NCBI GenBank assembly: GCA_001949185.1
Contig: BDGG01000001.1
Span: 7,824,149 to 7,888,148, forward strand
Length of the DNA stretch: 64,000 bases
Direction of reading: 5' to 3'
Source of the DNA: Ramazzottius varieornatus
Lineage: Eukaryota > Animalia > Tardigrada
Below the pieces are notes generated by a model. It made no database searches. It worked only from the letters and a program-made list of their open reading frames with translations, and was not told the origin of the DNA. Positions 14,024-38,456 of the stretch are shown here, piece by piece (position 1 is the first letter of the stretch; every line of letters begins with the position of its first letter). A program made the position numbers and the translations under genes.

Positions 14024-14030
14024 TATAAAA
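14024..14030 (+). promoter_or_regulatory. Probable TATA box of defensin-like gene copy 1
   Basis: TATAAAA about 130 bp upstream of the ATG, conserved in copy 2 (TTTTATA at 26364-26370). Confidence 0.55.
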
Positions 14031-14156
14031 GCTGTGACACCTTTCGATTGTTTAGATACTGTCGCACTTTACTTGGTCGACACATGCAGTTTGCCTTTCC
14101 CCATCGGTTGCCTACTTACTGGCTTCTTCGTTTCCCGGTTACTGCAAACGCTCACC

Positions 14157-14443
14157 ATGAAATACGCTGTTCTTTTCGTCCTCGTTGTGGTGTGCAGCTT
14201 CCTCGGTAAGTAGACATCACGGCTTCCCATTGTTCCGCAGAACATTTCCAAGAGAAACACGTCGCCCTAAAACTGCTCGTCGATATTGCAGTTATCGATC
14301 AAGCCTTGGCAGGCTACGACGGATGTCCCGGTTGTCCAATGAGTAACGGAGGAAACTGTAACCAGTGCTGCATAGATAAAGGATCCAAAGGTGGCGGTTC
14401 CTGCTCTGGCTTTATGTGGACGTCCTGCTGGTGTACTGATTAA
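14157..14443 (+). CDS. Secreted 8-Cys CS-alpha-beta defensin-like peptide, copy 1 (66 aa; exons 14157-14205 and 14292-14443)
   Basis: Spliced product MKYAVLFVLVVVCSFLVIDQALA-GYDGCPGCPMSNGGNCNQCCIDKGSKGGGSCSGFMWTSCWCTD*. It has a signal peptide with a phase-1 intron inside it and the CxxxC / GxC / CxC defensin pattern. Confidence 0.85.
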
Positions 14444-17864: not shown

Positions 17865-19921
17865 TTATGGCTTGTTACGAGCTTTCATATTTTGAATTGG
17901 CGAAGGCACTTCGTTAAGAGAAACCGTACAGCCAGTAGCTTCCGTCAGCCGTTCCTCTGGACAATGTATCCATCCCTCTCCTTCAACTGGACTTTTTAGC
18001 GGGTACGTTGCTGCAACCTACAGAACGAAAGTAGCCACAGCGTACTTGCTGAGTTGAACACGATCTGAAGAACCTCGCGGCTGTCAGAAAATTCACCTGT
18101 AGCTTTCCTGGCTCCATTTCGTAGAGCATTTCTCTCTTATGCAGAATTCTAAGACAATCAAGCTCGTTGGCGAACCATCGACAGACTCGTCTTCGCTTCA
18201 TCTGAACTTACGTTCGGTTGTTCATAAAGAACACGCTATCCACTGTTGGTGGAGCGCCGCTGATTTCGTTGAGGCTTCGAACCTCATCACTCGGCTTGAC
18301 GGGTAATTTCTCATCCGGATAGAAGGCTTGAAAAGTTGAACCTACAACCTTAGTACTCCAGATCAACTGAGACAGGATGAACATGACATTACGGACCCAT
18401 GTACAAAACATCTGGCTCACCAGAAACTGCGATGAAGGTGTGGTTGTTCAGCTGGAACACACCATCTATCGGCGACATCAACCCTGGGAAGCCGCTTTTT
18501 ATCCGTCGGAACTCGATCGTCGATAACCCAGGCTTTAGACCATTGCGATATTTGTGATACCGGTCTCCCTGAGAACAAAGGACAAAAAATTATCTTTCGA
18601 CCTAAACAAATTAGTGAAACAACGTACTTGGAAGAGGTAGTCAGAGCCTTTGATACTGACAGCAGCCAAGAGTCCTCGGAGAGCTGGGTCCAATTCAAAT
18701 GGCTGGTCGTCTACTGGGTTTCCGTCGGTGTCGAAGCGGTAAACGTTCTGGCCCTTGATCGCCAGAATGGCATCGCCGATCGTCAGGATCTTATCAAACG
18801 GCATCTACAGTAAGGACGCATCGCTCAGTGTTTTGAATAATTTTTCAAACCTTTGTCATTTTGAGGGTTAACTGACGTCATCGCAGACTTTGGGCCGGGG
18901 AATAGGCGAACACTTCAGCAGAGCGATCTGGCTTCCGTGGTCTGAAACTGCTCGCTGAGCCAGCATTCTTTTCTGCGAATGACCTTTCCCGCTTCGTAGG
19001 AGAAATGAAGGGACGCTATAGGGGATTGCAGCAAAAGACCTCGCCAATCCCGGAGCATATTCTGAAACAAGTCCTCCACCAGCGCCACCGCCCCCGCCAC
19101 CGAGGGACGATAACAGGAACGGAAGAAGCAAATTCGACCCGTGACCACCTTCTTCGCTTCCACCACCAAACGAAGACAAAGCTGCAACCACGATACAGTT
19201 GCATAATTAGACGTATAGAGATACAAACAAAACAAACTTGTAGAAGTACACGCATGCGTCTCAAGTCCTAGCCAGAACACGGTGGAGAAAAAAGTGTGCG
19301 TCAAGACTTTTATCTCGCTTAAGACAAAGGTAGGGCGCGTGCGCGTACGTGCTTTGGGTGTGGGTTTACCGAGAAGCGGGAGAAGGGCTTGGAGGACCGA
19401 GTTGATCGATGCCGGCGAGGGGATGGGTGGTTGGGTGGCGCCAAGTGGCGGAGGTGGAACGGGAACCTGTCGTTCGAAAGGAGCAGATGGCATTGGTGGG
19501 GCTTGACCCTCGAAGAAGAGCTGGTCGGCATACGACCCAGAGTACGGAGCGATCATAGTGGTGGTTGATGCAGGAGGGCTCCAATCCAGAGAGGGGAGCT
19601 CTAAAGCTTTGACAGCTCGTTTATGTCGACCAAGTACTACAGATAAGAGCTGGTCCAGTATCAATGTAAATGGTGTGAGAACGGCAACAATATGGCTACT
19701 ATGGTCATAAGTTCACCTGCTCTTCGTTCCATTTTACTCTGATGCAACGGGTCAAAAACACGTACGTCCTAAAAATAACCGAGCAAATCGAACAAGATGA
19801 TCCAAATACAAAATGACGAAATCCGGGGGAAAAAGATAGTCTTGATTACCTTGGTGTCAGAGCAGACAAGCATTCCCAGAATTTCGACCGCAAGCAGTAT
19901 CCCGTCATTCTTTGGCCACAT
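17865..19921 (-). CDS. Secreted low-complexity + hemopexin-domain protein A (HPX-A), ~9 coding exons
   Basis: Weak signal peptide (MWPKNDGILLAVEILGMLVCSDT), RHKR site, Pro-rich then Gly-rich region, then CSPIPRPKVCDD. Four blades follow (PFDKILTI..AIKGQNVYRF; LLAAVSI..YLFQGDRYHKY..GFPGL; IDGVFQL; VDSVFFM..LHKREMLYEM) and the C-terminus GWIHC...GC. The 5' exons are less certain. Confidence 0.8.
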
Positions 19922-21011
19922 TGCTACTATAGGTACTGCGTCAGAAAACCATTTGGAAAACTCTGAGATCTTTTACAAAGTGCCCGCGTCGCATCAAGAT
20001 CTTCAGATGATATCAGTTTGGATACGCTGCTGATCGTCGAGTTTTCGCGTCAGTCTTCCGGATGACCAGCTTGACAAGGGATCGATGTTAAACTTAGGAA
20101 ACCACCCGGGCCTTAGGTATCGTTGATTAGCTGATGCATTACGATTAGCGCCAGGATTTTGCGTCAATGTCCGATTTGAGCTCGCACGTACCACGAGCCA
20201 CTTCCGGGTTTCCCCGTCGCGGTGAGTCAACATCACGCTCAGAACCTTAGTTGATAAAGTTGTTTTACTGGAGGACTGAATCTCATCGTTGACGCATCAG
20301 CTAGCTTAGATTAGAATTAGTACGATCAAGCCAGTAGACCGGCTCCGCAATCTTCAATACAATTCTTTTATCCGAGTTCATACCGACAGCTTCGTCATCT
20401 TACCTTGTTCGTATGAAGAAAACCAGGATCCTAAATTCAGGTGTGCTTGATTGCATACATAGGATCTTCCCTGGTTTCCAGTCTGACATTCAAATCACGA
20501 CTCTTCGCATACCATCTGGATCCGATCCTGTTCTACTTTATTCAGTATTTGGTTCTTGCCAAATTTAATTGTTAGTGTATTTCAGAAGTCGAATTTGATT
20601 CTTAGTGTATTCAAGAAGTCGATTCGCGGAGACATAGGGACCGAGATGAACACGGACGCCAGCTGCGATCAGTGCGGTGAACGAGGCAGCGATGAGGATA
20701 ATCCTGGATCAAGAGTCAAACCGAGGTGTCAAACAGCTGATCTGGTCACTGCCACTACCGTCCAGCATTTAGGATCCTGGCACATGCTGCTAATCTCCTT
20801 ACCTCGTGCGGTCAGCAGAGACGTAAATCCGCGACGCCTTCATGCCGTAATCGCAGGGAAGTGGTGTGCGACGTAGCCACGCATAAACGGGCAACACGCT
20901 ACTATTTCTTGCTCCTCAGGTTTGACATTACTCTGAACTTCCGCATTGCCAAACGGACAACCAGTGTTTAATTTGCAGGTGCCTCCTCGATAGACAATAC
21001 CGTCCACGCAA

Positions 21012-22800
21012 ATGAGGTATCACGGAGCGCTTCTTCTGTTGGCGATATGTTCGGCCATTGGATTTTCGGAGTCCACCAACATCCGCCAAGACCTGGCTCG
21101 TAAGCAAATAATGAGGTGTTCATTGACTGCTGGCTTAACTGCAGATGTCTTTCGTTCATAGCGCGCTTGGAGCGGGAACAGCGTTCCATCATGTCTTCTG
21201 AGCTCTTGGCTATGAACATGATGCTGCCGTTGCTGACTTCCGCAGCGCTGAATGCAAATAATGCGGATAAACAGGCCAACCTCAACCAACGACAAATTCA
21301 GAATGAAGGAGCAGGTCAGCCAGCAGTTCCTGGCGAGCCTACCGCCGCTGCCTCGCCTTTAACCCAGTTGTTACCCTTCCTACGTAAGCGCCATCATCTC
21401 AACAAAATGCATGTTGTGTAATGGCAACTATACTTGTGTTGCAGTTGGTCCTTCTGGAGGTTTCGCCAGAAAAATTCTGGGTGGCGGTAGCGGTGGTAGT
21501 TTCGAGGTAGGCAAGACTGGTCGCCTCCTGACTAACGTCCTCCTGGCCAATGCTATTTCCAATGCGCTCGCACAAACACTTGCTACGACGACAGCGACGA
21601 CGACCAGTCAACCTCCTTCGGCAAACTTAGTGGCTGGTCCGGGACGAAGGTCGCCAAAGAAGGCCGAACTTCGCATGACCAACGTGGCCATTAATAGAGT
21701 CACCAGTGAGACGGACCCGAAAGTGGTCAGAAGTCCCGCGACCGACACTGATGACAGATGTTCGTCATACGTGCCGCGAAGTCAAGTCTGCAATGACGTA
21801 AGTTTGGCTACCATTCTGTTGAGCGTCCCTCACACGTGGTCACTTTTTGGTCACTTTTCAGTTACCTGTGGATAAGATTCTGGCTTTGAAAAACGCCGTG
21901 GTGGTATTCAAAGGGCGGAACGTATACCGGGTTCGTCCCAGTGGGGAACCATTCGACCTGGAACCGACGCTGATTGACGAGAAGGTCGAACCGTTAACTG
22001 CCGCCGCGGCAATTGGAGATGCCCAATACGTCTTCCAGGTACGTTTCTCTTGCACCATGCACATTTTCTCGAACGTTCCGGAAGAATCGTAAACAGTTGT
22101 AAACTGACGTTTCAGGGTGACAAATATACAAAGTATGATTCGAATTTCCGTCAAGCGCTCGGTGTCTTCCCGAAACCTGTGTCTGAAGGGTTCCCTGGTG
22201 TTTTGACGCCAGTCGACGGGGTCTTCAAGCTAAACAACCACACTTACGTGTTCGTCTCTGGTAAAATGAGCTTTTATGGTTCTGTACATCTATTATGTAC
22301 TGCGTAACATGATATCTCTTCCAGGTACCAAGTTTGTGTATTTCCAACCGGACGCGAACCCGCAAGTTGACCCGCGTTACAGCCCACAGTACTTGGATAA
22401 TATTCCCGGTGCACCAGCTACTATTGATAGTGTCTTTACACTGAAGAATCGGAAGTAAGTTTGGCTTAGGTACTGGTAACTTCCTGCTTCAGCCTTAATC
22501 GTATTGATTCCGTAGGTTTCTGCACAAGGAGGGCTTGATCTACGAACTATCACCGGACGAAATGAAGGTAAGAAGTGGTGGGTAACGCCGGGGACAGTTC
22601 GCTCTTTTTCTATTAATAGCATTGCCTTTTCACCGAATGTATGCACGTCTGTGTTTATGAAGGTGACGAGTGAGATTCCGGTGTTAAGTACCACAAAGGA
22701 AGGCTGGCTGAAATGCCCGGACGTATTTCCAGCGCGCTGCAATCATCGTCAACTTGCCATCACAACAACGATGGCTTCTGAACCTTTCGCTCTGCCCTGA
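21012..22800 (+). CDS. Secreted low-complexity + hemopexin-domain protein B (HPX-B), 8 coding exons
   Basis: Signal peptide MRYHGALLLLAICSAIGFSES, REQR site, Ala/Gly/Thr-rich region, then CSSYVPRSQVCND. Blades PVDKILAL..VFKGRNVYRV / LTAAAAI..YVFQGDKYTKYD..EGFPGV / VDGVFKL / IDSVFTL..FLHKEGLIYEL, then GWLKC..C. All introns are GT-AG and in phase. Confidence 0.85.
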
Positions 22801-23197
22801 ATATCCGCATTGGTCGAGATGATAATTATAGGGCCCACCTTATGCACAATTTCTCACATCACGTTCTCTTAACGCTGAAATACGTATCTGTAATCGCTTC
22901 GGACATCAGCTGCATAGACAGCTACGTTCATGGTTTGTTTTGCCAAAACTTTTTGTAGACAAAGCATGGGTAAATCACTTCTTCGAACTTGAAAGAGTCA
23001 CGTACTGTGGCGAAAGCAGTTTAGTTAAAGGAACTGCCGCTGCAAGTACTCGACGGAGCATCAGCGCACAGACTGGCCCACTTGACACGGCTTCAGCAAG
23101 CAGCCGATTCTGTGTGACCGAATAAATATCATCCACATCTCATATCGATATTAGTAAACATCCTGAAAACTCGCCACACGTGAGAGGCGCGAGTAGA

Positions 23198-24919
23198 ATG
23201 ATGTTCACCTTCCCCATCTTGATTGCACTGAGCAGCTTTACCTTAGCATGGAGTGTAGCTCAAGCGTTCGAAGTGCCGTCACATTCTTCAATGCGACCTC
23301 CTACTCCTCCCGCTCCCCCTCCAAAGTCCCCACCCTCTTTCCAGGAAGCTAAGAGTAAGTAGGTAGGTATTTTTTGCGAATTGCGCACTTACTCCTTCTC
23401 GACCATTATCTCGCTCGATCCATGGCGACTGCGTCAACACGGTTAATTCGCAGAGATTTTGGCTGAGGCCATAACTACGCTCAAGCCGGCGCAGCTTCGT
23501 GACGGGCTTTTGCGTTCAGCGGAAGGCGGTTTTATGGGATCGGCTGAAGGTATCGGGGGACTCTTGGCTCAGTTACTAAAACTGGAAGCTCTAATGGCTG
23601 CCCTGTCACCGCCCGCCGCTTCACCGCCTGCATCAGGCAGTGGCGCCGCTCCCCCGGCACCACCACCAGCCGCTGGAACTCCACCAGCCGGTGGGACCCC
23701 ACCAGCGGCCGGCTCTCCACCAGCGGGCGCTCCTCCGCCTGCGGGCGGCTCTCCTCCGGATTTGTCGAAGCTGTTATCCCGTAAGCTAGCCTTACTTTGT
23801 CGGTTCGATGCTATGCAAAGGCAGACATGTGTACTTTCCAGTGATGGCGTTGTCGGGCGGCTTTGGAAGTGGCGACGACGCGGATGAAATGGCACTTGGA
23901 TATGACGACAGAAATACGGTCAACTGCACTTCCGACGGGATAACGCGCGGCATTTGCGATTCCCATGTATATTGAGAGTGATGGACGCTCTCTTGGCCAT
24001 ACAGCGCGCAGACTGAGCCGTACATATTTTTTGCTCTTTTTGCAGAACAGCATCAACAACTTGATAACCTTCCCGGATCACGTCTTGGCCGTGGGTGCAG
24101 AAGATGTCTTCAAGGTTGCGGCGGACGGTACGCCAATCGATGCCTTTGGAGACCCGAAGTTCTACGTCTTCCAGAAGCTCAACGGCACGCCCACGGCCAG
24201 TCTACAGATCGAACACCTCTTCTACGTGTTTTTCGTAAGTGACTTTAAAGGTCTCGTTGTGTACCTGTGTTTTATTGCGGTATCAGTGGCTTTCGTGTTT
24301 AGGGAACGGAGGTAGCCTTACTGAACAATCAGACCAGCGCCACTTTCCACCAACGATTGCCTGTCAGAGATCTGTTCTTCAAAGTCGATCGGCCTGTAAT
24401 CGGAGCCTTCCGATTCAACGACCATACTCTGACGATATTTTACGGTAAGTGCGCATATTTAATTTTCATAAATCAAAGGTGGTGAAAATCGTGACCGTGT
24501 CTTGCAGAAACCCACTTCGTTTTCTATCAACCACTGATGAATCCGCCCATTGATCCTCGCTTCAGTCCACAGCCAAATTCCGTCATTCCAAACGGTCCCG
24601 ACAAGATTGATGGAGCACTGCAGATAAATGGCACCAAGTATGGGCTCGAAATATTGGTTCCTACAGATATTGAACACGAGATGTGACGTTAACGTTATTT
24701 CATTGTAGTTTCCTGTATCGACAAGGATGGTTGTATGAAATTGCCAAGAACGAGATGGTGGTAAGTCCATGTTGAAGCATCCCTACTGTAACAGGTCCAG
24801 ACAGGAGCCTCCAAAAAAGCTGTGTTTTCTTTGCTATGCAGGTGGTGGCTAAACGTCCTCTCCGCAAATCCAGAGGGGATTCTGGATGGATAAAATGCGG
24901 GCAACAGTCCTGTAACTAG
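23198..24919 (+). CDS. Secreted Pro/Ala/Gly-rich + hemopexin-domain protein C (HPX-C), 8 coding exons
   Basis: Signal peptide MMFTFPILIALSSFTLAWSVAQA, PPA(A/G)G repeats, then CTSDGITRGICD and four divergent blades (SINNLITF; TASLQI..YVFFG; VIGAFRFNDHT; IDGALQI..FLYRQGWLYEI), ending GWIKCGQQSCN*. Intron positions match HPX-A and HPX-B. Confidence 0.82.
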
Positions 24920-25822
24920 GCTTTGGCTACTCTTTCCGTCCACTTCCCTCTTGGCGTTCGATGTCCTTGTGACCTTGTCGGTTAATCGAACGAAATAATC
25001 GCTGATGCTAATATGTGACAGTCGTTGTGACGTGTTCAGAACTTGCGTACGTGCGGTACACTGATAGCTTTATTTTTTTATCTCCACGAAAAGAAAAGAA
25101 AAGTTAACTTTAGCAGAACGGACTCATGGAAGAGTGCTACAGTAGTTCTGTTCGACAGCGTTCCCGAGGGTCGGAGCTAGAACATTCTACCAACATAATA
25201 CTGTATTAGCAAAGGGAATCCTTAGACCTTCAAATGTACCTAGGGTTCACGACTTCGATGTTTCTGCGTTTCCGAAGTGCTTCTGTATTTCCGAGTCAGG
25301 TTCTCTTCCTGCGAGTTTTGTTTGTCTTTACCATAGTCCGGTCGTTCGAAATGCGTACCAAATTTTTGGATTTCTAAAACGCGAAAATCATTCAAAGTCA
25401 TATGCAAGAACGAGCAAGTACTTGCGGACGAACCACGGGTTGGACATAAAGATACCGGAACCTGGGAAGGTGCATGTGAGAGCAAACTGAGACGGTGTTG
25501 CCGTATGGTTAGCTTCAAAGTCAACTGATGGAGGCGTTTTTGCTTCTGAAAGTTGTATCTTCCTTGGTAAAAACCTTTTGTTGCCTTCATCGGCGCTTTT
25601 ATCCGTGCGCCTGAATGAGTAGGTCGGTGCTTTTCTGAATCTGTTCCGACTAGCGTCAGAACCGTTGCAGGACGTGTTCGTTCTTACTGTCGTATTATCA
25701 TTGACCACAATTTGAAATTCATTGACCACAATTTGGACTGTACTTGAAGCACGAGGGTTACTTAAACCGGGTAAATTTTTCAATAGCATTTCAATAGCAT
25801 TTTTCAGTAGCATTATTCAATG

Positions 25823-26505
25823 AAAAACCGGGCCGTTGGGTCTTGACGGACAGTAGAACCACGTCAGGTAAGACAATCAATTAATGGGCAATGAAATGAT
25901 GTTCACGCTTAATGAAGAGATTGACGCCTAAATGATATTCACGCTTTCATTTAATCAGTACACCAGCAGGACGTCCACATAAAGCCAGAGCAGGAACCGC
26001 CACCTTTGGATCCTTTATCTATGCAGCACTGGTTACAGTTTCCTCCGTTACCCATTGGACAACCGGGACATCCGTCGTAGCCTGCCAAGGCTTGATCGAT
26101 AACTGCAATACCGACGAGCAATTTTAGGGCGACGTGTTTCTCTTGGAAATGTTCTGCGGAACAATGAGAAGCCGTGATGTCTACTTACCGAGGAAGCTGC
26201 ACACCACAACGAGGACGAAAAGAACAGCGTATTTCATGGTGAGCGTTTGCAGTAACCGGGAAACGAAGAAGCCAGTAAGTAGGCAACCGATGGGGAAAGG
26301 CAAACTGCATGTGCCAACCAAGTAAAGTGCGACAGTATCTAAACAATCGAAAGGTGTCACGGCTTTTATACTGCAAGAATAACTAGCTATCTATCCGTCT
26401 TTTGCGCAGAAACAGTGAGTAATTGTCGTCACAACTGTCTGCTTTCGCCGAAAGTGTCATGCAAAGAGAGATAACCATCACGGAAGTTGGTCCGAACCGT
26501 ACCAT
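25823..26505 (-). repeat. Arm 2 of the inverted duplication (runs into an assembly gap)
   Basis: Reverse complement of 13726-14570 with one internal deletion. Confidence 0.92.
25951..26237 (-). CDS. Secreted 8-Cys defensin-like peptide, copy 2
   Basis: Same 2-exon structure as copy 1. One coding change (AGT>GGT, giving CPMGNGG instead of CPMSNGG) and 3 intronic substitutions. Confidence 0.85.
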
Positions 26506-26555
26506 NNNNNNNNNNNNNNNNNNNNNNNNNNNNNNNNNNNNNNNNNNNNNNNNNN
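26506..26555. other. Assembly gap (50 N)
   Basis: Run of N. Confidence 1.
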
Positions 26556-27633
26556 CCCATCGGTTGCCTACTTACTGGCTTCTTCCCCTATCGATCACAT
26601 TCCTGCAGAACTCAACAATGCGGTCATCGCTGATAAATCAGCCGACTTCTGTTTGCCGTAATGCGGATTACTGAAGTCATTGCGGACAACATTTCCTCTA
26701 AATGACTCAGTGGAGACAAATTAATCATTCCCACAAAATCCTTAATGACGTACCACTGTAGTGGAATTCATTTTCAGTTAATACTTATCAAGTCTGAGTT
26801 TTGCTGAGATCTAAAGTCATGCAAGCTTAAATTGTCAACCGACGGTCTTTCCATCAGTATTTAATTTTCTTCCCCAGCTGTCTCCTCCTTAAATATACAG
26901 CGAGACGCGGCAGTGAAAAGAAAAGCCCAGCAAGTGGCGTTACAGCTAACAAATAATATTATCCGCCGGTGCAAACGCTACGGTAAAATATGGAATATAA
27001 TAGCACAATGGGATCCAATCACGTTCAAAGTTTATGGGGGAGCTACGAATCGCAAGTTTTCGTAAAAAATCGGTTGTTTACGGTCGACCGATGGCCCTGT
27101 TCTCACTCGACCTTTTTGCATTCGGGAAAGGCTTTCTTCATGATTTCAGCAAGAAAACGGGCTAGCGTTCTCCTGTCTTGCGAACTGACCAGTGCTTCCG
27201 GGAATTCGCTTCGCAGTCTTCTGTTCACCTCGTCAAGGGACAGAGTTCCGGCTTTGTCGACCACCACTGCATTTCGTAAGAAACTTGCGAGCTGCAGCCG
27301 AACAGCTGTGTTTGTCCTTCTGTGAATTTTGGATTCAGCATTGGGTACGGCTCACAGAGGAATCAGTGGCGTTGTGTCTATAAAATAAAACAGTTTTCAG
27401 GTTTATAGAAACAACAAGGTTTCTGATGATCACTGATCACGTGGTTGAGTGCGCGATAATTCGGTAGCGTTATAGTGCTGTATTGCCACAACATATGTAA
27501 AAAAATCAATGAAGATCGGGTTTCGAACTCGAGCTAATCTGCAGCCAGCGTGAGAAGCACCACAAATAACCACGCTTCCAAGGGAGTGGTCAAAGTACAC
27601 AGTGTCACAGCGTGGCATGTTGGAGTCTTTGGC

Positions 27634-28083
27634 NNNNNNNNNNNNNNNNNNNNNNNNNNNNNNNNNNNNNNNNNNNNNNNNNNNNNNNNNNNNNNNNNNN
27701 NNNNNNNNNNNNNNNNNNNNNNNNNNNNNNNNNNNNNNNNNNNNNNNNNNNNNNNNNNNNNNNNNNNNNNNNNNNNNNNNNNNNNNNNNNNNNNNNNNNN
27801 NNNNNNNNNNNNNNNNNNNNNNNNNNNNNNNNNNNNNNNNNNNNNNNNNNNNNNNNNNNNNNNNNNNNNNNNNNNNNNNNNNNNNNNNNNNNNNNNNNNN
27901 NNNNNNNNNNNNNNNNNNNNNNNNNNNNNNNNNNNNNNNNNNNNNNNNNNNNNNNNNNNNNNNNNNNNNNNNNNNNNNNNNNNNNNNNNNNNNNNNNNNN
28001 NNNNNNNNNNNNNNNNNNNNNNNNNNNNNNNNNNNNNNNNNNNNNNNNNNNNNNNNNNNNNNNNNNNNNNNNNNNNNNNNNNN
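27634..28083. other. Assembly gap (450 N)
   Basis: Run of N. Confidence 1.
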
Positions 28084-28783
28084 CCGGCGCCAAAGCGACT
28101 AATAGCCCATATGGGTTGTAAGTTACTCATCATAACCGAAAACGATATTTGATAACGGTAGACACAAACAAATATTCTGCTTGGAGTGTACAAACCTGTG
28201 CTGGCCTGCATAACCAGTGGAGTGGAATTATTTTCCTGGCCGACGTCCAGCAGTACCGGTCCAAAAGCTGTCACGTTCTGCGGCGTTGGGAAGGAGTGCG
28301 AAGGGACATCGACCACACCGAGACGCAAGTTCGGAGGTTGATGTCCGGTCAAGTTCGTAGGAGAAGGTTCAACAGGCTCTGGAGAACGACCGTAGGTAGG
28401 AGGACTGGCAGATTGAGCGTACGAGAAGGATGCTTCGGGGTGCGGAACAGGAGGAAGAACGGGAGCGATGTGGTTTGTGGTCGGAAGAGAAACCTCAGGT
28501 TCCTCAGTGCGTGTGGCCAGTTCCTCTGTAACAGTTTCAGGGTCGCCTACGACAAAATACTAATGTCAGCAACATCGGGTATAATCGAACTGTAGTTGAA
28601 ATTGTTTCGGACAAAATGGAATGTCGACAAATGAATCCGCGTGGAATTTTTATGCCAAGTGGCGTAGGCTTTCGGCCAATAGCCTTGTACACGTGCGCCA
28701 CTTGGCAGTCCGGCAGTATTGTTTTCCCCACGTCGCGCAACCCCACGTATGGTGACAATGCAAAGGTGCGCCACTCAAGATAA

Positions 28784-29425
28784 CTACCTGGGTAGAATCA
28801 TTCGCCGACACCTGAAATATTCTGCAAAAATAAGGTGATAGGGTGACGCACCATAAGGAAATAGTGGAAGGTCCGAGGGTGCAAAGCGTATTTTCTTTCG
28901 GCTAAACTGACGAACCAATTTCATACAGTGCCGAAGACCATAGGCTGGCTCCCACGAGTCTTCTCCGGGGCAGTTTTTCCACCTGACGGAATAATGACGT
29001 ATTCCGCCGTGGAATTTAGAAAACGTAATTTCTTCGACCTCAAAAAGTTCATCCGGCACAGGAAGAGAGATATGACGGGAACGGGTACACTTCTTACTCC
29101 TTTTCACGTCCAGTTCTTCCAAACGCAACCTGACACGTTGATCTACAGCAAACTGGATAAATCTTTCAACCTCGTCCTTTGAAAAAGACATCACGTCTGA
29201 ATTCCGCTCGGAATTGGGCATATCTCCATACAATAACCGAACGTCCGAACCTATAATAGAACCACGACAAGATGGACATTTCCAAGTACTTTTATCCTCG
29301 TTAGCCAGTAATTCCTCCAGACACGAATGATGCAGGAAATGGCCACACAGTGAAGCAGCAGGTCTGTGCGCCGGAATTGGGAGATACTCCCTCAAACATA
29401 TGGAGCATTCAGGTTTTTCTCCCAT
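28784..29425 (-). CDS. RING-H2 finger + chromodomain protein (probably continues through further exons towards ~27100)
   Basis: RING-H2: CSIC...CGHFLHHSC...WKCPSCR. Chromodomain: FEVEEITFSKFHGGIRHYSVRWKNCPGEDSWEPAYGL..CMKLVRQF. A Pro/Thr-rich open frame with splice sites lies downstream at ~28546-28196. Confidence 0.75.
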   Translation of the reverse strand: MGEKPECSICLREYLPIPAHRPAASLCGHFLHHSCLEELLANEDKSTWKCPSCRGSIIGSDVRLLYGDMPNSERNSDVMSFSKDEVERFIQFAVDQRVRLRLEELDVKRSKKCTRSRHISLPVPDELFEVEEITFSKFHGGIRHYSVRWKNCPGEDSWEPAYGLRHCMKLVRQFSRKKIRFAPSDLPLFPYGASPYHLIFAEYFRCRRMILPR

Positions 29426-30239
29426 TTCCAACAGTAATTAAAATCTTCCTGGTGTACATACAATACCCGAACAATATTTCGTAATGGTCAGAAGTGATAC
29501 AATAATATCTAGCGCTGAAACCTTACCAAATTCAGCGACAGATGAAAACTCATATGAGTGCACTAGCAACAGATGTTTGTCTGTCCGTTCGAAATGCAAA
29601 GCGAGTTCGAAGAATGATTTATGGTCGTGTATCAACTCTTATCAAAACAACGCTTCTCCCTTCTCCCTTCTTGCGGCCAAGACGGCTATTGTCTTTCGTA
29701 AGGCCACCGTCTTGCGTCTATAGCTAGCTATGGCCTTTCTTCTAACGGGATATGCGCATCACGCATATATCTCTGATGCCGTCGCGGTTGAACTAGCCAT
29801 GGTGTATGACTGTCTCCTACAACTAGAGGTCTGTCTGGTAGAAGTTCCAGTAGGCATAGTGCCGAGTGTTGCTGTGCGGTTCTCCAGTGTTTTGCTCGTG
29901 TAAGGCACAGGTAATGGCTACAAGATGGGGTCAAGTTGAGCGCTATTATTGCATGAACTTGGGTAGCTCTTACTGCTATAAGTACTGTAGTTGACGTTTG
30001 GTAGTGCGTGATGCTTGAGCGTATCTGTAAGTGGATACGGTTAAGATCAACTTAATTTCTCGATTTGACTCATACAGTGATCGTCATGTACATAAGACGG
30101 TCGGACACTCAAACAACGGACAAACGGCCAAAGTATTGTAATATTACGGTACCTTCGGCGAAGTCTAGACGCAAAATTTTAATCAGGTACCGAAGGAATT
30201 AATCTAATTACGTTGTTCGGAAAATGTTAGCCGGCGGAC

Positions 30240-32829
30240 TCACAACGAACAATGAATCGCTACCACCGAGTATGACCATCTGCTTTGTGATGCTGGCAGT
30301 CTCCACCAAAACATAATCTCGCGATAATTGTACTTCGTAAACGTGCTTTTCACGCATCTATTTTCGCAGAAATCTTTTTCACTGCGAAGCATTAAATTAC
30401 CAAGCACTAAGGTTTGCAGGACGGATCCGGTGTCGACTGATAGTATGGCCACTATGTTCTTGACGGCAATGGCTTTCCCTGTCCTTTCAAAGACGATGCT
30501 TTCATTTCGGCAGGAGGCCTCGTTGTGTTTCCTTGTTCTTACCGGAATTCCTGCCTCAACCACAGCTCGTTTGAATAGATGAATTTCATCATCCGCCTAT
30601 ATGAAGCCGTGGTGGTCCGCGTATGCCATAACGGCTTGGGATATCCGCTTGGATGGAATCTTTTCTGGATTACCAATCAGCCGACATATTCCCGAAGGTC
30701 CTCTTGCGTAGAAAATTGACTCCGTCATCCCCATAATAGATCTGGCGGTACGTGTGACCAGTTGAGGAACGGATTCATTGCTGACTAGTTCTTCGACCAT
30801 CACAGCGCATTCTGTTAGAGTGCGGAAGTCGTTCATTATGCTCTTCGTGTTGTTATTTAGGGCACGAATGCGCCGACCAATTACCCCAATCTGGTTCTCA
30901 GGTCCATAGCAGGAAACGTTCTGGAAAGGCCCATGAATTTTGAGGGAAAGAGCCAGGTGTTGAACCAGGTGAAACGAAAACTTCATTTCCTCTTCTCCGA
31001 AATACCGTTCGAATTTCCGCAAAAACACGTTGCTCAGTCTGTCAACGATACTGATATCCATTTCGGAAATGGAGTCTTGCGTGGATAGCCATGCTATTCT
31101 ACTGGCCAGACAGAGGAGTGTGGAAGTCTTACGGGACTATGTCTTTCGTGACGTAAGGTGCGCCATGCTGGATGAAAAATCTTAGCTCGTGGGCTTTCAT
31201 TTTGTTATACTGGGCGATGCTTCTTGTTTTTTTGACTCGTGACCCGGAACCGCAATACTGAGCCATAAGGTGTCAATCTGTTTTATCTCACTTTTCGTTA
31301 GATTCAACACCTCCCCACCTTCCACTATCTGCCCCAGGAACCATCGAGACAAGCCTTCATCAAACATGTGCATGACGTCGATGAAAAAGGCGTTCACAGC
31401 ATCCATCTTCGGCCAGTCGGTAACCAATGAAGGTCTTCGGAATCCTTTTGTTCGCCTTTCATCCAGCAGGTACTTTCGGCGTTCGGTCGAGAGGGTATCC
31501 CACTGCGCAGTCATGTCGACAAAATCTTGGTGGCTTTTTAACGTGGGGTTTTTCACGTATTTGTAGCAGATCTGGTGTGCAATGCTTTCGCCCACCTAAG
31601 AAAGATGCATTTAGCATATTGAATCAGAATAGATTTTTGGGTCCAGAATATGACGTGCTTTATTTCTTCGGGTCGTGTTACCAACCTGCAGACAGTAGAT
31701 ACATCCCTGGCATGCGGAGTGAGACAAATGTCCATTTATGGTGGTGCGTTCCGGTGAATCAGAAAGGAAACCGTGGACGTACCCCGGAGAGTAATGTTCT
31801 TCGCCGAAAGCATCGATCCAGAGTATTGGCAGGAACGTGTTACTGTTCTCGTCCAGTTCTTGCAGCTGGAGGGTCAGTTTCATCACGAAACACTCACGAT
31901 CTTTGGGGAGATCTTCCCCCACCCACACAGCCGCGAGGTGCCACACACAGCGTCTGCCCCGGAGCGGCAAATCTAGAATCTGGACGAATATCAGGTACAT
32001 CTTCTTTGTGCTCTTGCTGAATTCTGCACCATCCGCGTGGAACAGAAAAATTATGTGCGACCTTGGCATGTCCATTTGCTGAAATCGGCTTCCATCAGTG
32101 ACGTCACGCAAAATTCCAGGGACACGTTCTTGACGAGGATCCACAAGCTTACCGTACTTGTGTAGCGCTTCTTCGTTTGTCTTCTTTCTCACCTGACGCT
32201 GGTAGGGGCAGATGTACACTATCTTCACATAATGGTTTCTTTTAATGTTAAGCAGGATCTTCAGTGATCTCGCGCTCTGGGGAAACTTCATTCGTTTCTT
32301 TGGGTCTGTCGGGCTCCATTTCCCATCAATCACCACAGCCATCACTTTGAGAAACTTGCCAAGCGTAGCGTTCGATGTTCCGGTGCTTTCCGCCACATAC
32401 AGTAACATACTTCAGACTTGGTTCAGCGTCCAGCCGTCGTTCGGGTCATTTGATGCCATCGGGACAAGCTCTGGTATATCTACAGAGAAGGAAGAAAGTG
32501 TTAGCTAGTGGTCACGATAACATGAGACTTGTCAAATAAGTCAATTAATCACTTTTGATACCCTCGATTGTTCTGTCCATGTCTAGCTGTCCCACGCTGC
32601 TGTCTATAGTCGTTTTTCCAGCATCATTCCCCTCCTCTTCCTCTCCTTCTTCCGACAATTCTTGATCGACACGGGTTGGTGACAGCTGATGAGGATTGCA
32701 CTCCCTCGATCGCGGTCGCTTACGACCTGGGCTGCCCCGGTCCGTCCCTAATCGATTCTTCTGGCTTTTCACAGCTGCAGCACACTTGGCCTTTAACCTG
32801 GAAATTCGGGTATTCTTCTGATACTCCAT
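30240..32829 (-). mobile_element. Degenerate CACTA/EnSpm-type (Transposase_21-like + DUF4218-like) transposase
   Basis: Motifs RDVTDGSRF, FHADG, ILDLPLRGR, AAVWVG, SDSPER..HSACQGCIYC, GFRRPS..IDVMHMFDEG, and YFGEEEMKFSFHLVQHL..HGPFQNVSCYGPEN. Interrupted by stops and frameshifts. No terminal repeats identified. Confidence 0.82.
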
Positions 32830-33146
32830 TTTTGGGGGTAATGGAAACTCAGTTTCTTAAGAATGACCATAAACCATGTCGATACGGTCAATGACGTAAT
32901 GCGGGTGTGGTTCTGTTCATTCTGTCTTTTTGCGTTCGTTGAAGTTTCGAGAAGTCACGGGTATTTGGACCGTGTGTGTCTAGAGTGGCAATTCCAAGTG
33001 TAGAGGGATAGTTTACGCACAGCCATAAAGCAGCGTTCAGTCAGAACAACCTGCAAGTTGCACATGGTGATGGTCGGAACCAACGGCTAAGTTTTCTTCC
33101 CTGGATTTAAATTATTTCATTCCTGTAATCCCCTGCTCACTTTACG

Positions 33147-35311
33147 ATGGATTCTTCCAATCAGACTCGAAAGCGAAAACGGAGGGACTACAGGACATCG
33201 GATCCGGAATCTTCAGCGGTTGTACCGAATTATTCCAAGACAGTGCTCAAAAACACGCAAGATGGTGGATGTATGATTTTTCCCATTATCACCTTCAAAC
33301 GGTATGACATCTTGCGACAAACGTATTTACTGACTGTTCGTATTTTGCAGACTGGGTTCTTTTCCACTACGACGATGGGAGTAACTACCTTCTGCCACCC
33401 ACCAGCATCAGTGCGGACATTATTCTGCCGCAGTATCGATTCATCGACGCTGTCAAAGGCGAGGAAATTGTGGCCGTTGGGATGAAAGTTCGTGTCTACT
33501 GGGACACTGCTCACCCTGTCGGAAAGGCAACTGTCATTTCTGTGGACACTGACCAAGCCAGGATGAACATGCTATTCACCACTCTCGAACAGACCGCAAA
33601 AGAACAGGCGGCAAAGAATAAGGTACTTTCCAAAGATGCCAAGTGCGTTCCCAGTTGCAAATACTTCCAAATTTTTCAGCCCGTAAACCCTCAAACCCCT
33701 AATAGGCTGTTGCCTGCGCAAGTGCGCAAGTTGATGCGACTTATGTTTTTCAGAAGAAGAACGTCACGCCGAAAGCGGGCCACAGAATGAAGCATTCGGC
33801 AGGGACGGAAAATGTTCGGGTGAAGCGGTCAGCACTCAACCGTAGCCGATTGAATAAAGCAGGCGCAGCTCGTCTATCGGACTCTGAGAAGGATACGGCT
33901 CCAGACAGCGATTCCGCCGACGAGCATGCTCCAGGACCAAAGAAAGCGCCGGTTCGGAAAGCGGTTTCCCTTGAAAGCGGGGACGAGTCAGGAATGGAAT
34001 CTTTCGTCAACAAAGAGAGTGAGACAGAAGGATCGCAGATGTCAAATCGTCTCACCCGTGTCATGTTTCCTGCTGCCCAGTCGACCGAAAGAGAGGGTGT
34101 GAATGAATCCGGAAAAGAAGAGGAAGAGCAAATTGATGCGGCTGACTTTGACGACGACACTTACAATATCGATAAGGATCCGGACAATCGTAAAGGTACG
34201 GTGGTAGTCAGTTGTTATATTTCTCAGTTCATTTTAATCAAAATTAAGTTTAGGAATTCCAAAATCAAACTCCTGAAAAGAAATCGGATTGGGCGTCTGG
34301 GTAGATTTTATTTCTAAACTGCAGGTGGTGGCTTCGCGGATGTCGATGACGAAGGCGACAGCATAGATGGCTCACGCTCGTTGCAAGGTACTGTATCCCG
34401 ATCGTTATTTTGGTTTGCGCATGGGAGGCGGTCGAACAAGAACAGCGAGGCTATGGACTAAGATTTCTTGACGATTTTGACAGGCGGTGGCACTGTATCA
34501 GCAGATGACACTCCAAGCTACTCCGAAGAAGAACTAGCGGAGTTCCGAGCGAAACGAGATGAACATCGGAAAGAACTCCAAAGTAACGAAAACCTACTAC
34601 GCATTCCCTTATTTTTATATTTAGTTCATCTGGTTAAATTACCATTCACAGAGGCATTACTCAAGAAAGCTGGCGGAACGGCTGCAATACGGAAGCCGAA
34701 GTTAGCAGGTAAGGAAAACGTCGGTTTTCAAAGTGCGATGGTGTAGCATCAGACAGCGTTCACTAATTGTTTATGATCGTAGTGCCTTCTGTCAACTGGT
34801 CATTCCTGCCGAAAGATACCAGAGCCGTCGACCGCAGAGTCTTCCAGCGACTGGATATCCATGGGTCAAAGAAATGCGATATCTGGGTGAAACAGTCACT
34901 CCTCAAAGAGGCTGTGAAGAAGGCGAAGGACATGGACAGCTACGCACAGAAGTTGATGTGGAAGGCTCTGATTTCAGAGGAAGAGTTGATCGAAGTAGCA
35001 AAGCTGAAAGTCAAGGGCGTGGGTTTCGCAAAGCTGTTCGGTACGGGCAACTTCGACGCGTTCTACGGTATGAAATTACTCCTTTTTCACTCTCCTTTAC
35101 TTCTCTGCCGATTTCATCTGTCTTCGCAGCTAACTAGTGATTTTTTCTTATAGATCATGTAGTAAAGTATCGGAATCAAAAGGCCAGCACCGATGGCGGC
35201 AAATGGATTAATGAGATGACCACTGCGGGAGGAATGCGAAGGAAGTTCATCAGTTCTTTCGATCGTAACGTGCATCGTATTCTGAATAACACCAGCAGCA
35301 CTGTCCAGTAA
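33147..35311 (+). CDS. Multi-exon protein with N-terminal small beta-barrel-like domain, acidic linker and C-terminal BEN-like domain; putative accessory gene of the CACTA-like element
   Basis: NLS-like RKRKRR. N-domain YWVLFHYDDGS...GMKVRVYWD..ATVISV. C-terminal DIWVKQSLL..YAQKLMWKALISEEEL resembles BEN (F.R.Ll..lF..EEL). Transcribed divergently from the transposase, ~320 bp apart. Confidence 0.6.
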
Positions 35312-36331
35312 ATTCTGAGCCACGTCGTCGTGTTTAACTTGTTAATGTTGAATCGCCCACTACGTGCAATATTATCTTCCTGTTGATTTCACGTGTACCA
35401 GCGAACGCTACGTTCCAAACCGCCAGTAAAAGCGCACCAACAAGCTTCTGCAGTGCCATCTGTCGTTGATTACTCTCGTAGCACAATAATCATTGCGTAC
35501 TATCGTTCCCGGCAATGATCATTCCTTGTCGGGAAACTGTCCGATGACTTTATTATGAGCCGATGTCAGTCAATATACAGATATCTGTTCAAGCTTTTGC
35601 ATTGTAAAAGTCATCCGCCACTTTCGCTTTCGTCAACGTAGATAATTTTGTCTACGTTTAACGAACATTTTTGTTAAGACTAATTCATCCACAAAATAGT
35701 CCGCTGGAAAATCTAAAATGGCGTCATCCATGAGAGAAGTGATCGATAGGGGTAGCTCATCATTCTGTCTGATATGCTCAGCCTAAAGTCAAACAAAAAC
35801 TAAAAAGCGTAAAACGACGAGCCCGAGGACGAGCTTATAGACAACGGCCTGTTTCATGAGATGCGTGATCATTATTTTGACTAGATGGATAGGGAAGAAG
35901 GTCTAGCACTATGCTGTCCTTCGTTGCTGTTTCTGGTGTTATCGCTTTACGGACTAGTTTTACTGCGCTGTACCGAAGCGTACAGTATCTCGAGCATTCG
36001 CGAGTATGCTGAATATTGTAATGCTTCATGAAACGCACGCGGTACGTCATGATAGGCTTGAAGTTGAACCCCTGTCCGGAAATTATGCTCGAAACGATGT
36101 TTCGTAAGTCCAATGTGGTTTATCTACTTTCGTCAAAGCTCGTAAAACGGTTCGGATCGTTAATCCAAGAAACCATTTCTGCTACCAAGCTGCCTTGGTT
36201 GCGTAAGCTGTTGTGTATCAGTGTTCAAACACTTCACAAAACCATGAAACTCAAGTCCCGACAGTATTCAATCAGCGCTTTCATTAGACTGCATGAAATG
36301 GCAAAAAGCCCTGTTTGATGACTTGGAAATG

Positions 36332-37002
36332 TTAGCCGTACTCCGGTGGCGGACTTGGTCCTGGGGCGGCAGCTGGAGCACTTGCCATCAGTGGCGCCAG
36401 AGCAGCGAGAAGCTGTTGCATTTGGGTAATGCTCATAGTACCAGCTTCACCACTGGCGGCTTCGGGCGGACTGACACCTCCTGCTCCGCTCACTCCACCC
36501 GACCGATGTTGTCCGTGAAGGAAGATAGCTGCAAATTCACGTAATTTAATGTCAGAACGATAACGATCCCACCTTACGCAAACGACAAGGCCTACGCGTT
36601 GTCGTTTACGCGGTTGAATAAAATCCGAAACTTACGTTGCAGCTCCAGGTTTTCCGCGTCTCCGACCTTCGGGTCCACAACGCGCTGACTATGGGGAGAA
36701 GCCTACGGAAAGATAATGCTGTAAAAATTCGCTGCGTCTGCCAGCCACGTCATAGTGTACGTAAATCATCCCCGTGGGTGGATGGCATTCATCCCACAAC
36801 CAACCGGTACGTACACGTGCTTTAGCGGATACAGCGTGTTCTCACAATAGCGAAACTGTTTAGGGATTCGGGGTTCCCAACGCAAATGCCTTACCCGCTT
36901 CACCAAGTTCCTCAGGCCGTTTGGAATACCCGCATTGCAGTATTCACTGAGACATCCCAGTACGGCGAAAACAACAGCAAGGAGACATATAAGTCTAGCC
37001 AT
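36332..37002 (-). CDS. Small secreted low-complexity protein D (123 aa; exons 37002-36895, 36702-36636, 36528-36332)
   Basis: Signal peptide MARLICLLAVVFAVLGCLSEYCNA, dibasic LVKR, and a Gly/Ala/Pro-rich tail with MQQLLAALAPLMASAPAAAPGPSPPPEYG*. Canonical GTAAG donors, phases consistent. Confidence 0.72.
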
Positions 37003-37696
37003 CTTACTACAACGCTTAGAGCCCAGTTACGAAACCCAGCTGGTTACAAGGAAGAAGCGGATTTGGTAATCTTCCTCGATGCAAAGAAGAGCTTTGTCTT
37101 GCTGCTTTGTGTTGCCACTGCTGAGCGGAAATTTACTTCCTTCAACAAGCGAATTTGCTTACTCCATTCAAATCTTCACGTCATCAAAAAAACTGCTTTA
37201 AAGCTGAAAAGGGCACGACCAGAAATTCACTAAACTTGGAAAAAGACTCGGCAACTCTGATGAGATGGACTCTAAGTCTGGCGATCTCTCTTCTGCCATT
37301 GTTTCGCGGGCAATTTTGTTCGGGCATTTCGTTCTGTATACGTTTTGAAGTGCCCAGAAAACAGGCGGAACTGATACCCTAATGATCACGCCCGAAAACT
37401 ACCTGCTTCAACGATGAAGATGGACCCGCCTGCTACGAACGAGCTTAACATAGGGCATAATTTAGAAGTGCAAACTGCAAGGCGCAACAGCACGTTCCAC
37501 AAAATCAGCAAAAGTTTTCGAGCAAACTCAATTGTTTTTTGCCGAGAACCCGCATCTCTAAGCGTGGCAGATCACCTGTCTTTGTGCCGAAGCCAAGACC
37601 TTTACAGCTTTTGGTCAGGTGCTGTCTTTACGTGATGTTTTGAAGGTGGGAAGACCGGTCCAGATGCTTCGACAGGTTTCCGCCCGAAGGTCTGTC

Positions 37697-38456
37697 ATGG
37701 CCGTCCGATGGCCAATATGGACCTCTGTCCTGACCCTCCTTTCTGTCCAACTGGTATCAGGTCACCTTCATATTGAACCACCGAGCGATGTTGATGCCGC
37801 GGACTTAGCGGACAACTCTACGATGTACACCCAAGGTTTCCCGTCTCTTCTATCCCCAGTTTCTCAAACTTGAAATATCGATATCTAGGCTATACTCATG
37901 CTTTTCACCAAACTAGGTAGAGCGGGTGACTCATTACGTTTGGTACGTCCAGCAAAGCATCGTTCGTCAGAAGCCGACTACCCGCTCATCCCGGCCATGA
38001 TGAACGACCCTCTAGGCATCGCTTTTTGTGTGCAACCAGATGACTGGATCGGCTTATCCATACTGGGCATTCTCAAAGTCCATCAAATGTTCAAGACGGT
38101 TGGTGCACCCCTCACCGAACCTTATCAAGGCCGATCCGAAGGAGGTAAGACGGAACCGTACTTTACAACCTTATTAACCTGATCATTTATCGGTGATGCG
38201 CTTTTGACTTCAGGTCCTCCGGCTCCGCCCGCTGCTCCAGGACCTGCTGCTCCCGCACCCAGTAATAATTTCAACCCATGGGTACCCTATATGATGAGTA
38301 AGTTGCTTACGGTTTGAGTTCCATCAAACGTTAAGGTTGTTCCTACATGATTTTGAAAGGGGTCTTGTTATAGTGATGTACAGCGGTGGTTACGGGCGTG
38401 GAGGAGAAAGCGGTCGGGGCCGTGGTGGGTTCCGAGGCGGAGGAGAAAGTGGTTAA
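37697..38456 (+). CDS. Small secreted protein E with Pro/Ala-rich segment and RGG/Gly-rich tail; 4 coding exons
   Basis: Signal peptide MAVRWPIWTSVLTLLSVQLVSG. All introns phase 1. Ends PPAPPAAPGPAAPAPSNNFNPWVPYMM|MMYSGGYGRGGESGRGRGGFRGGGESG*. Confidence 0.72.

What the first reader, a model, noticed from the sequence alone, without database searches (positions are those of the whole stretch)
17865..38456. Shared exon-bordered 'sticker' module links five secreted genes into one candidate self-assembling extracellular system
Seen in sequence: four genes have a Pro/Ala-rich spacer, then a short hydrophobic motif, then a phase-1 intron at the same point, then a Gly-rich segment. HPX-A: INSVLQALLPLL|ALSSFGGG. 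HPX-B: SPLTQLLPFL|LGPSGGF. HPX-C: PDLSKLLS|LMALSGGFGSG. Gene E: NNFNPWVPYMM|MMYSGGYGRGG. Gene D has the intronless variant MQQLLAALAPLMASAP. Extra copies occur inside the HPX arms (NLLLPFLLSSLGGGGG, MNMMLPLLTSAA, LLAQLLKLEALMAALSPP). Three carry basic convertase-like sites after the signal peptide (RHKR, REQR, LVKR). The genes include two head-to-head pairs (A/B and D/E), with transposon and defensin sequence between them. Inference: a co-expressed cluster of sticker-and-spacer proteins, with or without a hemopexin head, that co-assemble into a secreted material after processing. This is my best candidate for an undescribed system in the window.
Basis: partly seen in the sequence, partly recalled or inferred. 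Interest (0 to 1): 0.85.

Follow-up and report, generated by a model that had tools for sequence, protein, structure and literature searches.

The report
Tardigrade hemopexin proteins with disordered arms
Three neighbouring tardigrade genes encode secreted hemopexin-type propellers behind floppy Pro/Ala/Gly-rich arms, two of which carry one conserved leucine-proline motif, but the tests I could run do not support a five-gene self-assembling system with two nearby small genes.

Summary
The window is from Ramazzottius varieornatus. The five genes exist. A, B, C and D are the public hypothetical proteins RvY_02814, 02815, 02816 and 02823; E was modelled here.

A, B and C are tandem paralogues with a signal peptide (out of frame in A), a disordered arm of about 180 residues and a four-bladed hemopexin-like propeller. 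The propeller matches Pfam, a PDB profile search and a Foldseek search.

The phase-1 intron after a hydrophobic patch and before a Gly-rich stretch is real in B, C and E. In A the public model uses a donor 21 nt further on. For A, B and C this layout is inherited.

Only one motif is non-random: an LLPxL-type motif. It occurs twice per arm in A and B. Its copy at the exon end is the best conserved piece of the arm against Paramacrobiotus orthologues. It is absent from C, D and E.

E resembles C near the junction about as weakly as C resembles A or B (p about 0.006, uncorrected). D does not beat composition-matched shuffles.

The assembly gaps lie in no gene.

My reading is a lineage-specific variant of vitronectin/lubricin-like architecture beside two unrelated or distantly related small secreted genes. 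The scan also noted this stretch as s1-789771.

The parts
17865..19708 (-). HPX-A gene (public RvY_02814). It has seven exons: an arm, then a four-blade hemopexin-like propeller. The start codon at 19708 is out of frame with the following ORF.
   Evidence: Public model P0001. Pfam Hemopexin 21.8 bits against a cut-off of 21.3.
19371..19406 (-). A's exon-end LLPxL-type motif.
   Evidence: It is 89% identical to the Paramacrobiotus orthologue against an arm mean of 30%.
19087..19134 (-). A's internal second LLPxL copy, followed by a Gly run. It is not conserved in the orthologue.
19617..19628 (-). A's basic RHKR site. It is not conserved in the Paramacrobiotus orthologue.
21012..22800 (+). HPX-B gene (public RvY_02815). 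It has eight exons: signal peptide, arm, propeller.
   Evidence: P0002. Pfam Hemopexin 41 bits.
21347..21382 (+). B's exon-end LLPxL-type motif, followed by the phase-1 intron 21384-21444.
   Evidence: The junction is the same in the public model. It is 75-78% identical to the orthologue against an arm mean of 33%.
21173..21250 (+). B's RxxR site (21173-21184), conserved as RExR in the orthologue, and B's internal LLPxL-type copy (21215-21250).
23198..24919 (+). HPX-C gene (public RvY_02816). It has eight exons: signal peptide, Pro/Ala-rich arm, propeller.
   Evidence: My model is identical to P0004. AF2 model and Foldseek hits to MMP and vitronectin hemopexin domains.
23744..23779 (+). C's Leu-rich patch at the exon end, followed by the phase-1 intron 23781-23841. 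It is not an LLPxL motif and is not specially conserved.
23561..23614 (+). C's internal Leu-rich predicted helix. It is the better conserved hydrophobic element of C's arm.
36332..37002 (-). Gene D (public RvY_02823, 123 aa). It has three exons: a signal peptide, a KR site at the end of exon 1 (36895-36906) and a Leu/Ala patch (36374-36421). It is single copy.
37697..38456 (+). Gene E (my model, 177 aa). It has four exons and all introns are phase 1. There is a hydrophobic exon end at 38261-38296, then intron 38298-38373, then a Gly/Arg-rich last exon. It is single copy.
   Evidence: The fragment P0017 from another sample keeps exons 2-3 and the donor.
26506..26555 (.). Assembly gap 1. It lies outside all five genes, and continuity across it is doubtful.
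27634..28083 (.). Assembly gap 2. It lies outside all five genes, at the left of the transposon-like block.

Best explanation
A, B and C are a tandem family, so far seen only in eutardigrades, of secreted proteins. Each has a signal peptide, an intrinsically disordered arm of about 180 residues rich in Pro, Ala, Gly and Ser/Thr, and a C-terminal four-bladed hemopexin-like propeller closed by N- and C-terminal cysteines.

The hydrophobic patch, phase-1 intron and Gly-rich layout is an inherited feature of this family. It is not an independently shared module.

In the A and B types the exon-end LLPxL-type motif is a short linear motif under purifying selection. I infer that it is a docking site for a partner, that the arm acts as a flexible and possibly O-glycosylated spacer, and that the propeller is the ligand- or matrix-binding head, as in vitronectin and lubricin.

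D and E are separate small secreted low-complexity genes that sit next to the family. E may be a distant arm-derived relative. D shows only compositional likeness.

Shown: the gene structures, paralogy, fold, motif non-randomness and motif conservation. Inferred: secretion, spacer and docking roles, and any binding.
For: Identity and range: the genes are R. varieornatus RvY_02814-16 and RvY_02823, with orthologues in Paramacrobiotus metropolitanus and Hypsibius exemplaris. An HMMER search of 1.84 billion representatives found only 10 family hits.

Paralogy: propeller alignments give z of 77, 39 and 27, and intron positions and phases are the same.

Hemopexin: Pfam PF00045 is above its cut-off for the A and B types. 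A profile hits vitronectin, MMP-13, MMP-14 and hemopexin chains. The AF2 propeller has pLDDT 76-90 and hits MMP-2, MMP-14, MMP-9 and vitronectin domains at E about 1e-8 with TM-score (normalised to the target) 0.64-0.71.

Disordered arms: pLDDT is below 50 in both models, and the arms have no Pfam family.

Motif: the LLPxL type occurs 2, 2, 2 and 1 times in the four A/B-type arms, against 0.01-0.03 expected per arm. It is absent from C, D, E and from all 12 other retrieved proteins. The exon-end copy is the top conserved arm window.

D and E: both are single copy and found no paralogues. In particular, they did not hit the arms at E <= 10. Their junction windows score no better than shuffles.

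The fourth family member, on another contig, has no such arm.
Against: E's junction region matches C's about as well as C's matches A's or B's, which are true homologues (p 0.006 against 0.005-0.0065). Whole-arm C-E alignment gives z = 3.1 under block shuffles. E may therefore belong with the arms.

Pro/Ala/Gly-rich coding segments are locally enriched. There are 4 loci in 20.6 kb, against 3 in 210 kb of sampled genome and none in the rest of the window. My Poisson arithmetic gives about 0.002 for three independent units. This hints at a common origin or a common selective regime.

No expression, secretion or binding data were obtained, and signal peptides were judged by eye and hydropathy only. 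The motif regex was derived after seeing the Ramazzottius sequences, so only the Paramacrobiotus copies count as confirmation, and those are related by descent.
Confidence: 0.6

Rival explanations
1. All five genes form one co-expressed system of sticker-and-spacer proteins, with or without a hemopexin head. After convertase processing they co-assemble through their hydrophobic stickers into a secreted material.
For: The two groups lie close together and form two divergent pairs. Pro/Ala/Gly-rich genes are locally enriched. The sticker is conserved in A and B. C and E resemble each other weakly at the junction. Without the transposon-like block the two groups would lie about 3 kb apart.
Against: No common motif exists: the LLPxL type is absent from C, D and E. 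D and E junctions are not above shuffles. Hydrophobic clustering in most arms is not above shuffles. The three upstream regions share no words above chance. Only one of the three basic sites is conserved. The fourth paralogue lacks an arm. The complex prediction gave no verdict and counts neither way.
Confidence: 0.1
2. E, and less likely D, is an arm-only derivative of a C-like hemopexin gene. It arose by partial tandem duplication or shuffling of phase-1/phase-1 exons. This is shared ancestry and does not imply a shared assembly.
For: C and E arms align collinearly, with z = 5.7 under plain shuffles and 3.1 under block shuffles. The junction windows give p = 0.006. All three E introns and all arm introns of A, B and C are phase 1. 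A Ser-Gly-Gly-aromatic stretch starts 3-4 residues after the split codon in B, C and E. E's exon end and donor are kept in a related sample.
Against: E does not resemble the Hypsibius C orthologue (z = 0.2) or the Paramacrobiotus A arm. The p-values are uncorrected for 28 pairs. The ungapped junction test gives p = 0.17. Low-complexity composition inflates such scores. A genome search with E's exon 2 finds only itself.
Confidence: 0.25
3. D and E are precursors of small secreted peptides. They could be neuropeptide-like, or glycine-rich antimicrobial peptides in a neighbourhood that also holds defensin-like genes. On this reading they are functionally unrelated to the hemopexin genes.
For: D has a signal peptide, a 10-residue stretch, a KR site exactly at the end of exon 1, and a C-terminal Gly. 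E ends in a Gly/Arg/aromatic-rich tail. Defensin-like genes flank the hemopexin cluster as an inverted repeat. Glycine/tyrosine-rich antimicrobial peptides are known in nematodes; this rests on my own knowledge and was not tested here.
Against: No family match was found for either gene. E has a conserved 75-residue region that is not low-complexity, which is unlike a simple peptide precursor. No expression or induction data were obtained.
Confidence: 0.15
4. The arms have no specific function. They are linkers or pro-regions removed after secretion, and the hydrophobic patches are neutral by-products of low-complexity sequence.
For: The arms diverge fast, at 25-33% identity against 40-62% for the propellers. 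Both AF2 models show no confident structure or docking. B has a conserved RxxR site after the signal peptide.
Against: The exon-end motif of A and B is 78-89% conserved between genera and ranks at the top of all arm windows. The conserved basic site lies N-terminal to the arm, so cleavage there would leave the arm attached.
Confidence: 0.1

Closest known systems
Vitronectin and lubricin (PRG4)
   Same: Both are secreted proteins in which a long disordered region, Pro/Thr-rich and mucin-like in lubricin, precedes a hemopexin-like domain (PMC7060204). Vitronectin is the best sequence-profile hit (E = 1.2e-6) and is among the best fold hits.
   Different: The tardigrade proteins have no somatomedin B domain and no KEPAPTT-type repeats, and no Pfam family was found in the arms. 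The arms are short, at about 180 residues. A and B carry the LLPxL-type motif. Two cysteines stand on each side of the propeller instead of one.
Hemopexin-like domain of matrix metalloproteinases (PF00045)
   Same: Both have a four-blade propeller preceded by a Pro-rich hinge and closed by terminal cysteines. The top Foldseek hits are MMP-2, MMP-14 and MMP-9, and Pfam is above its cut-off for A and B.
   Different: There is no catalytic or pro-domain: Pfam finds only the Hemopexin family. Sequence identity is only 10-16%. The C type falls below the Pfam threshold.
Astacin- and cathepsin-B-hemopexin fusions noted elsewhere in this genome
   Same: They have the same propeller type behind a Thr/Pro-rich hinge in the same genome (first-reader notes). 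A preprint lists the hemopexin-like repeat among domains expanded in three tardigrades (10.1101/122309).
   Different: Those carry a protease domain; these genes carry none. The notes are unchecked. A profile of the first blade found only four copies of this subfamily in the genome.
Sticker-and-spacer extracellular proteins built from phase-1 symmetric exons (elastin-like)
   Same: Both have short hydrophobic patches separated by low-complexity spacers, and the arm exons are bounded by phase-1 introns. Symmetric exons preferentially encode disordered regions (PMC3632108). The elastin comparison is from my own knowledge.
   Different: There are no tandem repeats of a unit and no cross-linking motifs. 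Hydrophobic clustering is mostly not above shuffles. Assembly was not tested.

Membership tests
Hemopexin-like repeat / propeller (PF00045) | Match to the family profile above the curated cut-off | tested here: met
   P0002 scores 41 bits, P0007 34.2, P0009 25.2 and P0001 21.8, against a cut-off of 21.3. The C type (P0004, P0010) has no hit but is homologous to A and B (z = 27-39). The family profile hits vitronectin, MMPs and hemopexin in the PDB.
Hemopexin-like repeat / propeller (PF00045) | Four-bladed beta-propeller fold | tested here: met
   The AF2 models have four blades of strands with pLDDT 75-92. Foldseek hits include 1rtg, 3c7x, 1itv and 6o5e at E of 3e-8 to 5e-7.
Hemopexin-like repeat / propeller (PF00045) | Cysteines before blade 1 and after blade 4 that can close the ring | tested here: met
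   The cysteine before blade 1 is invariant in the alignment. Two cysteines lie on each side in all models. The disulfide itself is not testable here.
Matrix metalloproteinase (M10A) | Zinc-binding catalytic domain and pro-domain upstream of the hinge | tested here: not met
   Pfam finds no peptidase domain in any full-length member or in the arm exons.
Vitronectin / PRG4 family | N-terminal somatomedin B domain | tested here: not met
   No SMB hit was found in the Pfam scans of the six proteins or the arm exons.
Proprotein-convertase substrates | Conserved RxxR or KR site after the signal peptide, and cleavage there | tested here: inconclusive
   The sites are present in A, B and D. Only B's is conserved in an orthologue. 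Cleavage is not testable here.
   The LLPxL type occurs in A and B only. The junction-anchored test gives E p = 0.17, D p = 0.09 and C p = 0.14. The gapped test gives C-E p = 0.006 and nothing for D.
   This holds for B, C and E on canonical sites, and for B and C it also holds in the public models. A is ambiguous between two phase-1 donors 21 nt apart. D's motif has no intron. No transcript reads were available.
The complex prediction gave no verdict.

The most novel reading that the evidence does not exclude
The A/B/C proteins and the arm-like E (perhaps D too) are parts of one tardigrade-specific extracellular material, for example a cuticle, eggshell or secreted coat. Leu-rich stickers in disordered arms would hold the network together, and the hemopexin heads would anchor it. 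E would have arisen from an arm by exon duplication.
Probability: 0.08. Interest if true: 0.7.

Novelty: new variant of a known kind. Interest (0 to 1): 0.3.

Why it matters
Tardigrades show an expansion of hemopexin-like repeats (10.1101/122309), and nothing is known of what the protease-free members do. This small family couples a binding propeller to a disordered arm with one sharply conserved short motif, so it is a tractable entry point. The motif can be mutated, and the proteins can be localised and pulled down.

If the arms did mediate assembly, this would be a new type of extracellular matrix component in an animal known for stress tolerance. As it stands, the finding mainly corrects three public gene models and sharpens a hypothesis. 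It does not reveal a new system.

Tried and rejected
Splice sites and expression are untested.
- Genome letters.
- Joined models. Searches were made exon by exon or with public protein ids. Joined translations were used only inside local scripts for statistics. For this reason E's public protein was not retrieved.
- Complex prediction. Complex prediction on Paramacrobiotus B against A gave no answer (score 0.00), which is evidence neither for nor against binding.
- ESM Atlas. Nothing usable came back for C's arm or for D.
- Word-based search. The search with C was swamped by low-complexity words and added only one fragment.
- Upstream regions. Shared words among the A/B, C and D/E upstream regions were none above chance.
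- Papers. No paper in the library mentions the locus tags.
- Coordinate script.
- Rejected idea: the cluster is an MMP remnant. There is no trace of a catalytic domain.
- Rejected idea: the gaps break a gene. No model touches a gap.
Full report
**Source and gaps.** The window is G000:C1:7824149-7888148 of a 55.8-Mb, 200-contig assembly. Exact look-ups name the organism as Ramazzottius varieornatus. I tested the two N runs (26506-26555 and 27634-28083) first. Both lie between gene C (stop at 24919) and gene D (stop at 36332), and no gene model touches them. The ORFs that cross them are runs of X.

Gap 1 follows the right arm of an inverted repeat (13726-14570 against 25824-26505, 95-97%). The sequence after the gap starts with a perfect 30-nt inverted copy of 26265-26294, which the left repeat copy lacks. 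Continuity across gap 1 is therefore doubtful. The linkage and spacing of A-B-C with D-E rest on scaffolding.

**Gene models.** I read both strands and built models with canonical GT-AG introns of 59-192 nt and no internal stops.
- A (minus strand, 17865-19708) has seven exons.
- B (plus strand, 21012-22800) has eight exons.
- C (plus strand, 23198-24919) has eight exons.
- D (minus strand, 36332-37002) has three exons.
- E (plus strand, 37697-38456) has four exons.

C and D are identical to public RvY_02816 and RvY_02823. B agrees with RvY_02815 across the junction. However, the public model adds a 5' extension that buries the signal peptide, and it stops before blade 4.

A differs from public RvY_02814 in three ways:
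- The public model starts at an internal Met.
- It skips part of one blade.

The public donor gives a gap-free alignment with the Paramacrobiotus A orthologue. Without reads this stays open.

A's only plausible start codon (19708) encodes a peptide like the orthologue's signal peptide, but it is out of frame with the ORF that follows. This is either an assembly indel or a real frameshift.

**What A, B and C are.** Their C-terminal halves are clear paralogues, with alignment z of 77, 39 and 27 against shuffles and identical intron positions and phases.
- Pfam Hemopexin passes its cut-off for the A and B types. Single exons were weak.
- A family profile hits vitronectin, MMP-13, MMP-14, MMP-1 and hemopexin chains.
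- AF2 models of C and of Paramacrobiotus B give a four-blade propeller with pLDDT 75-92.
- Foldseek returns hemopexin domains of MMP-2, MMP-14, MMP-9 and vitronectin at E about 1e-8.

No protease or SMB domain is present. The N-terminal arms are below pLDDT 50, with only short predicted helices.

The family is small. A first-blade profile finds four copies in this genome. It finds ten proteins or fragments among 1.84 billion representatives, and all the named ones are from eutardigrades. The fourth copy, on another contig, lacks the Pro/Ala/Gly arm.

**The motif.** One precise pattern, an LLPxL type ([LMV][LMV]P[LFIY][LM]), occurs twice in the arms of Ramazzottius A and B and Paramacrobiotus B, and once in Paramacrobiotus A. 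Shuffles give 0.01-0.03 per arm. It occurs nowhere in C, D or E, or in the other retrieved proteins.

Its exon-end copy is the most conserved piece of the arm. It is 89% identical in A and 78% in B, against arm means of 30% and 33%. C's exon-end patch is not specially conserved (25%). C's conserved islands are an internal Leu-rich helix and an acidic stretch after the junction. General hydrophobic clustering is mostly not above shuffles.

**Do D and E belong?**
- Whole-arm local alignments were judged against shuffles that keep local composition. They give z of 5-8 for orthologues, 3.1 for C-E, 3.1 for A-D and 2.2 for C-D. Other pairs are not significant, including E against the Hypsibius C orthologue.
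- In a junction-anchored ungapped comparison with each half shuffled separately, E (p = 0.17), D (p = 0.09) and C (p = 0.14) do not beat the controls. The A and B types do.
- With gaps allowed in windows of 15 residues on each side, C-E reaches p = 0.006. That is similar to A-C and B-C, which are true homologues. D reaches nothing. These p-values are uncorrected for 28 pairs.
- D and E are single copy and do not hit the arms in a genome search.
- E's exons 2-3 and its donor are kept at 76% identity in a fragment from another sample, so E is a real conserved gene.
- No orthologue of D was found within the length range the search allows.
- Pro/Ala/Gly-rich coding segments are locally enriched: 4 loci in 20.6 kb, against 3 in 210 kb sampled elsewhere and none in the rest of the window.

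Taken together, E may be a distant arm derivative and D shows only compositional likeness.

**Intron phase.** All arm introns and all E introns are phase 1. Phase-1 introns are over-represented at signal-peptide cleavage regions (PMC1626468, abstract shown). Symmetric exons preferentially encode disordered regions (PMC3632108). Phase agreement alone is therefore weak evidence.

**Basic sites.** The RHKR, REQR and LVKR sites are present. Only B's RxxR site is conserved in an orthologue.

**Mechanism.** The best-supported reading is a secreted protein with a binding propeller head and a flexible arm that carries a docking motif. The nearest architecture is vitronectin or lubricin, which have a disordered or mucin-like region before a hemopexin-like domain (PMC7060204). 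Secretion, glycosylation, docking and any assembly are inferred, not shown.

**What could not be done.** The complex test gave no verdict. No shared upstream words were found.

**Verdict.** The five-gene self-assembling system is not supported.

Noticed in passing
window 19617-19732 (minus strand): HPX-A's start codon at 19708 encodes a signal-peptide-like stretch, but it runs into a stop after 15 codons and is out of frame with the main ORF. This is either an assembly indel or a real frameshift. The public model avoids the problem by starting at an internal Met.
   Followed up: partly
window 20556-21099: Public RvY_02815 has a 5' extension from an upstream ORF that buries B's signal peptide. 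The Paramacrobiotus orthologue starts at the signal peptide, so the extension is probably an annotation error.
   Followed up: partly
window 13726-14570 and 25824-26505: An inverted repeat of about 0.8 kb (95-97% identity) carrying defensin-like genes brackets the A-B-C cluster. Its right arm runs into gap 1.
   Followed up: partly
window 26556-26585: The first 30 nt after gap 1 are a perfect inverted copy of 26265-26294, and the left repeat copy has no such element. This may be a scaffolding artefact.
   Followed up: partly
window 28784-31061 (minus strand): An ORF with RING-H2 and chromo domains (28784-29431) and an ORF with a weak DUF4218 match (30597-31061) lie inside the transposon-like block that separates C from D.
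   Followed up: no
L005 4100-5400 (G000:C2, minus strand): This is the fourth member of the hemopexin subfamily. Blades 2 and 3 are in one exon, it has a short Ser-rich N-terminal region, and it has no Pro/Ala/Gly arm.
   Followed up: partly
window 36895-36906 and 36335-36337: Gene D has a KR site exactly at the end of exon 1, after a 10-residue stretch, and it ends in Gly. This layout resembles a peptide precursor.
   Followed up: no
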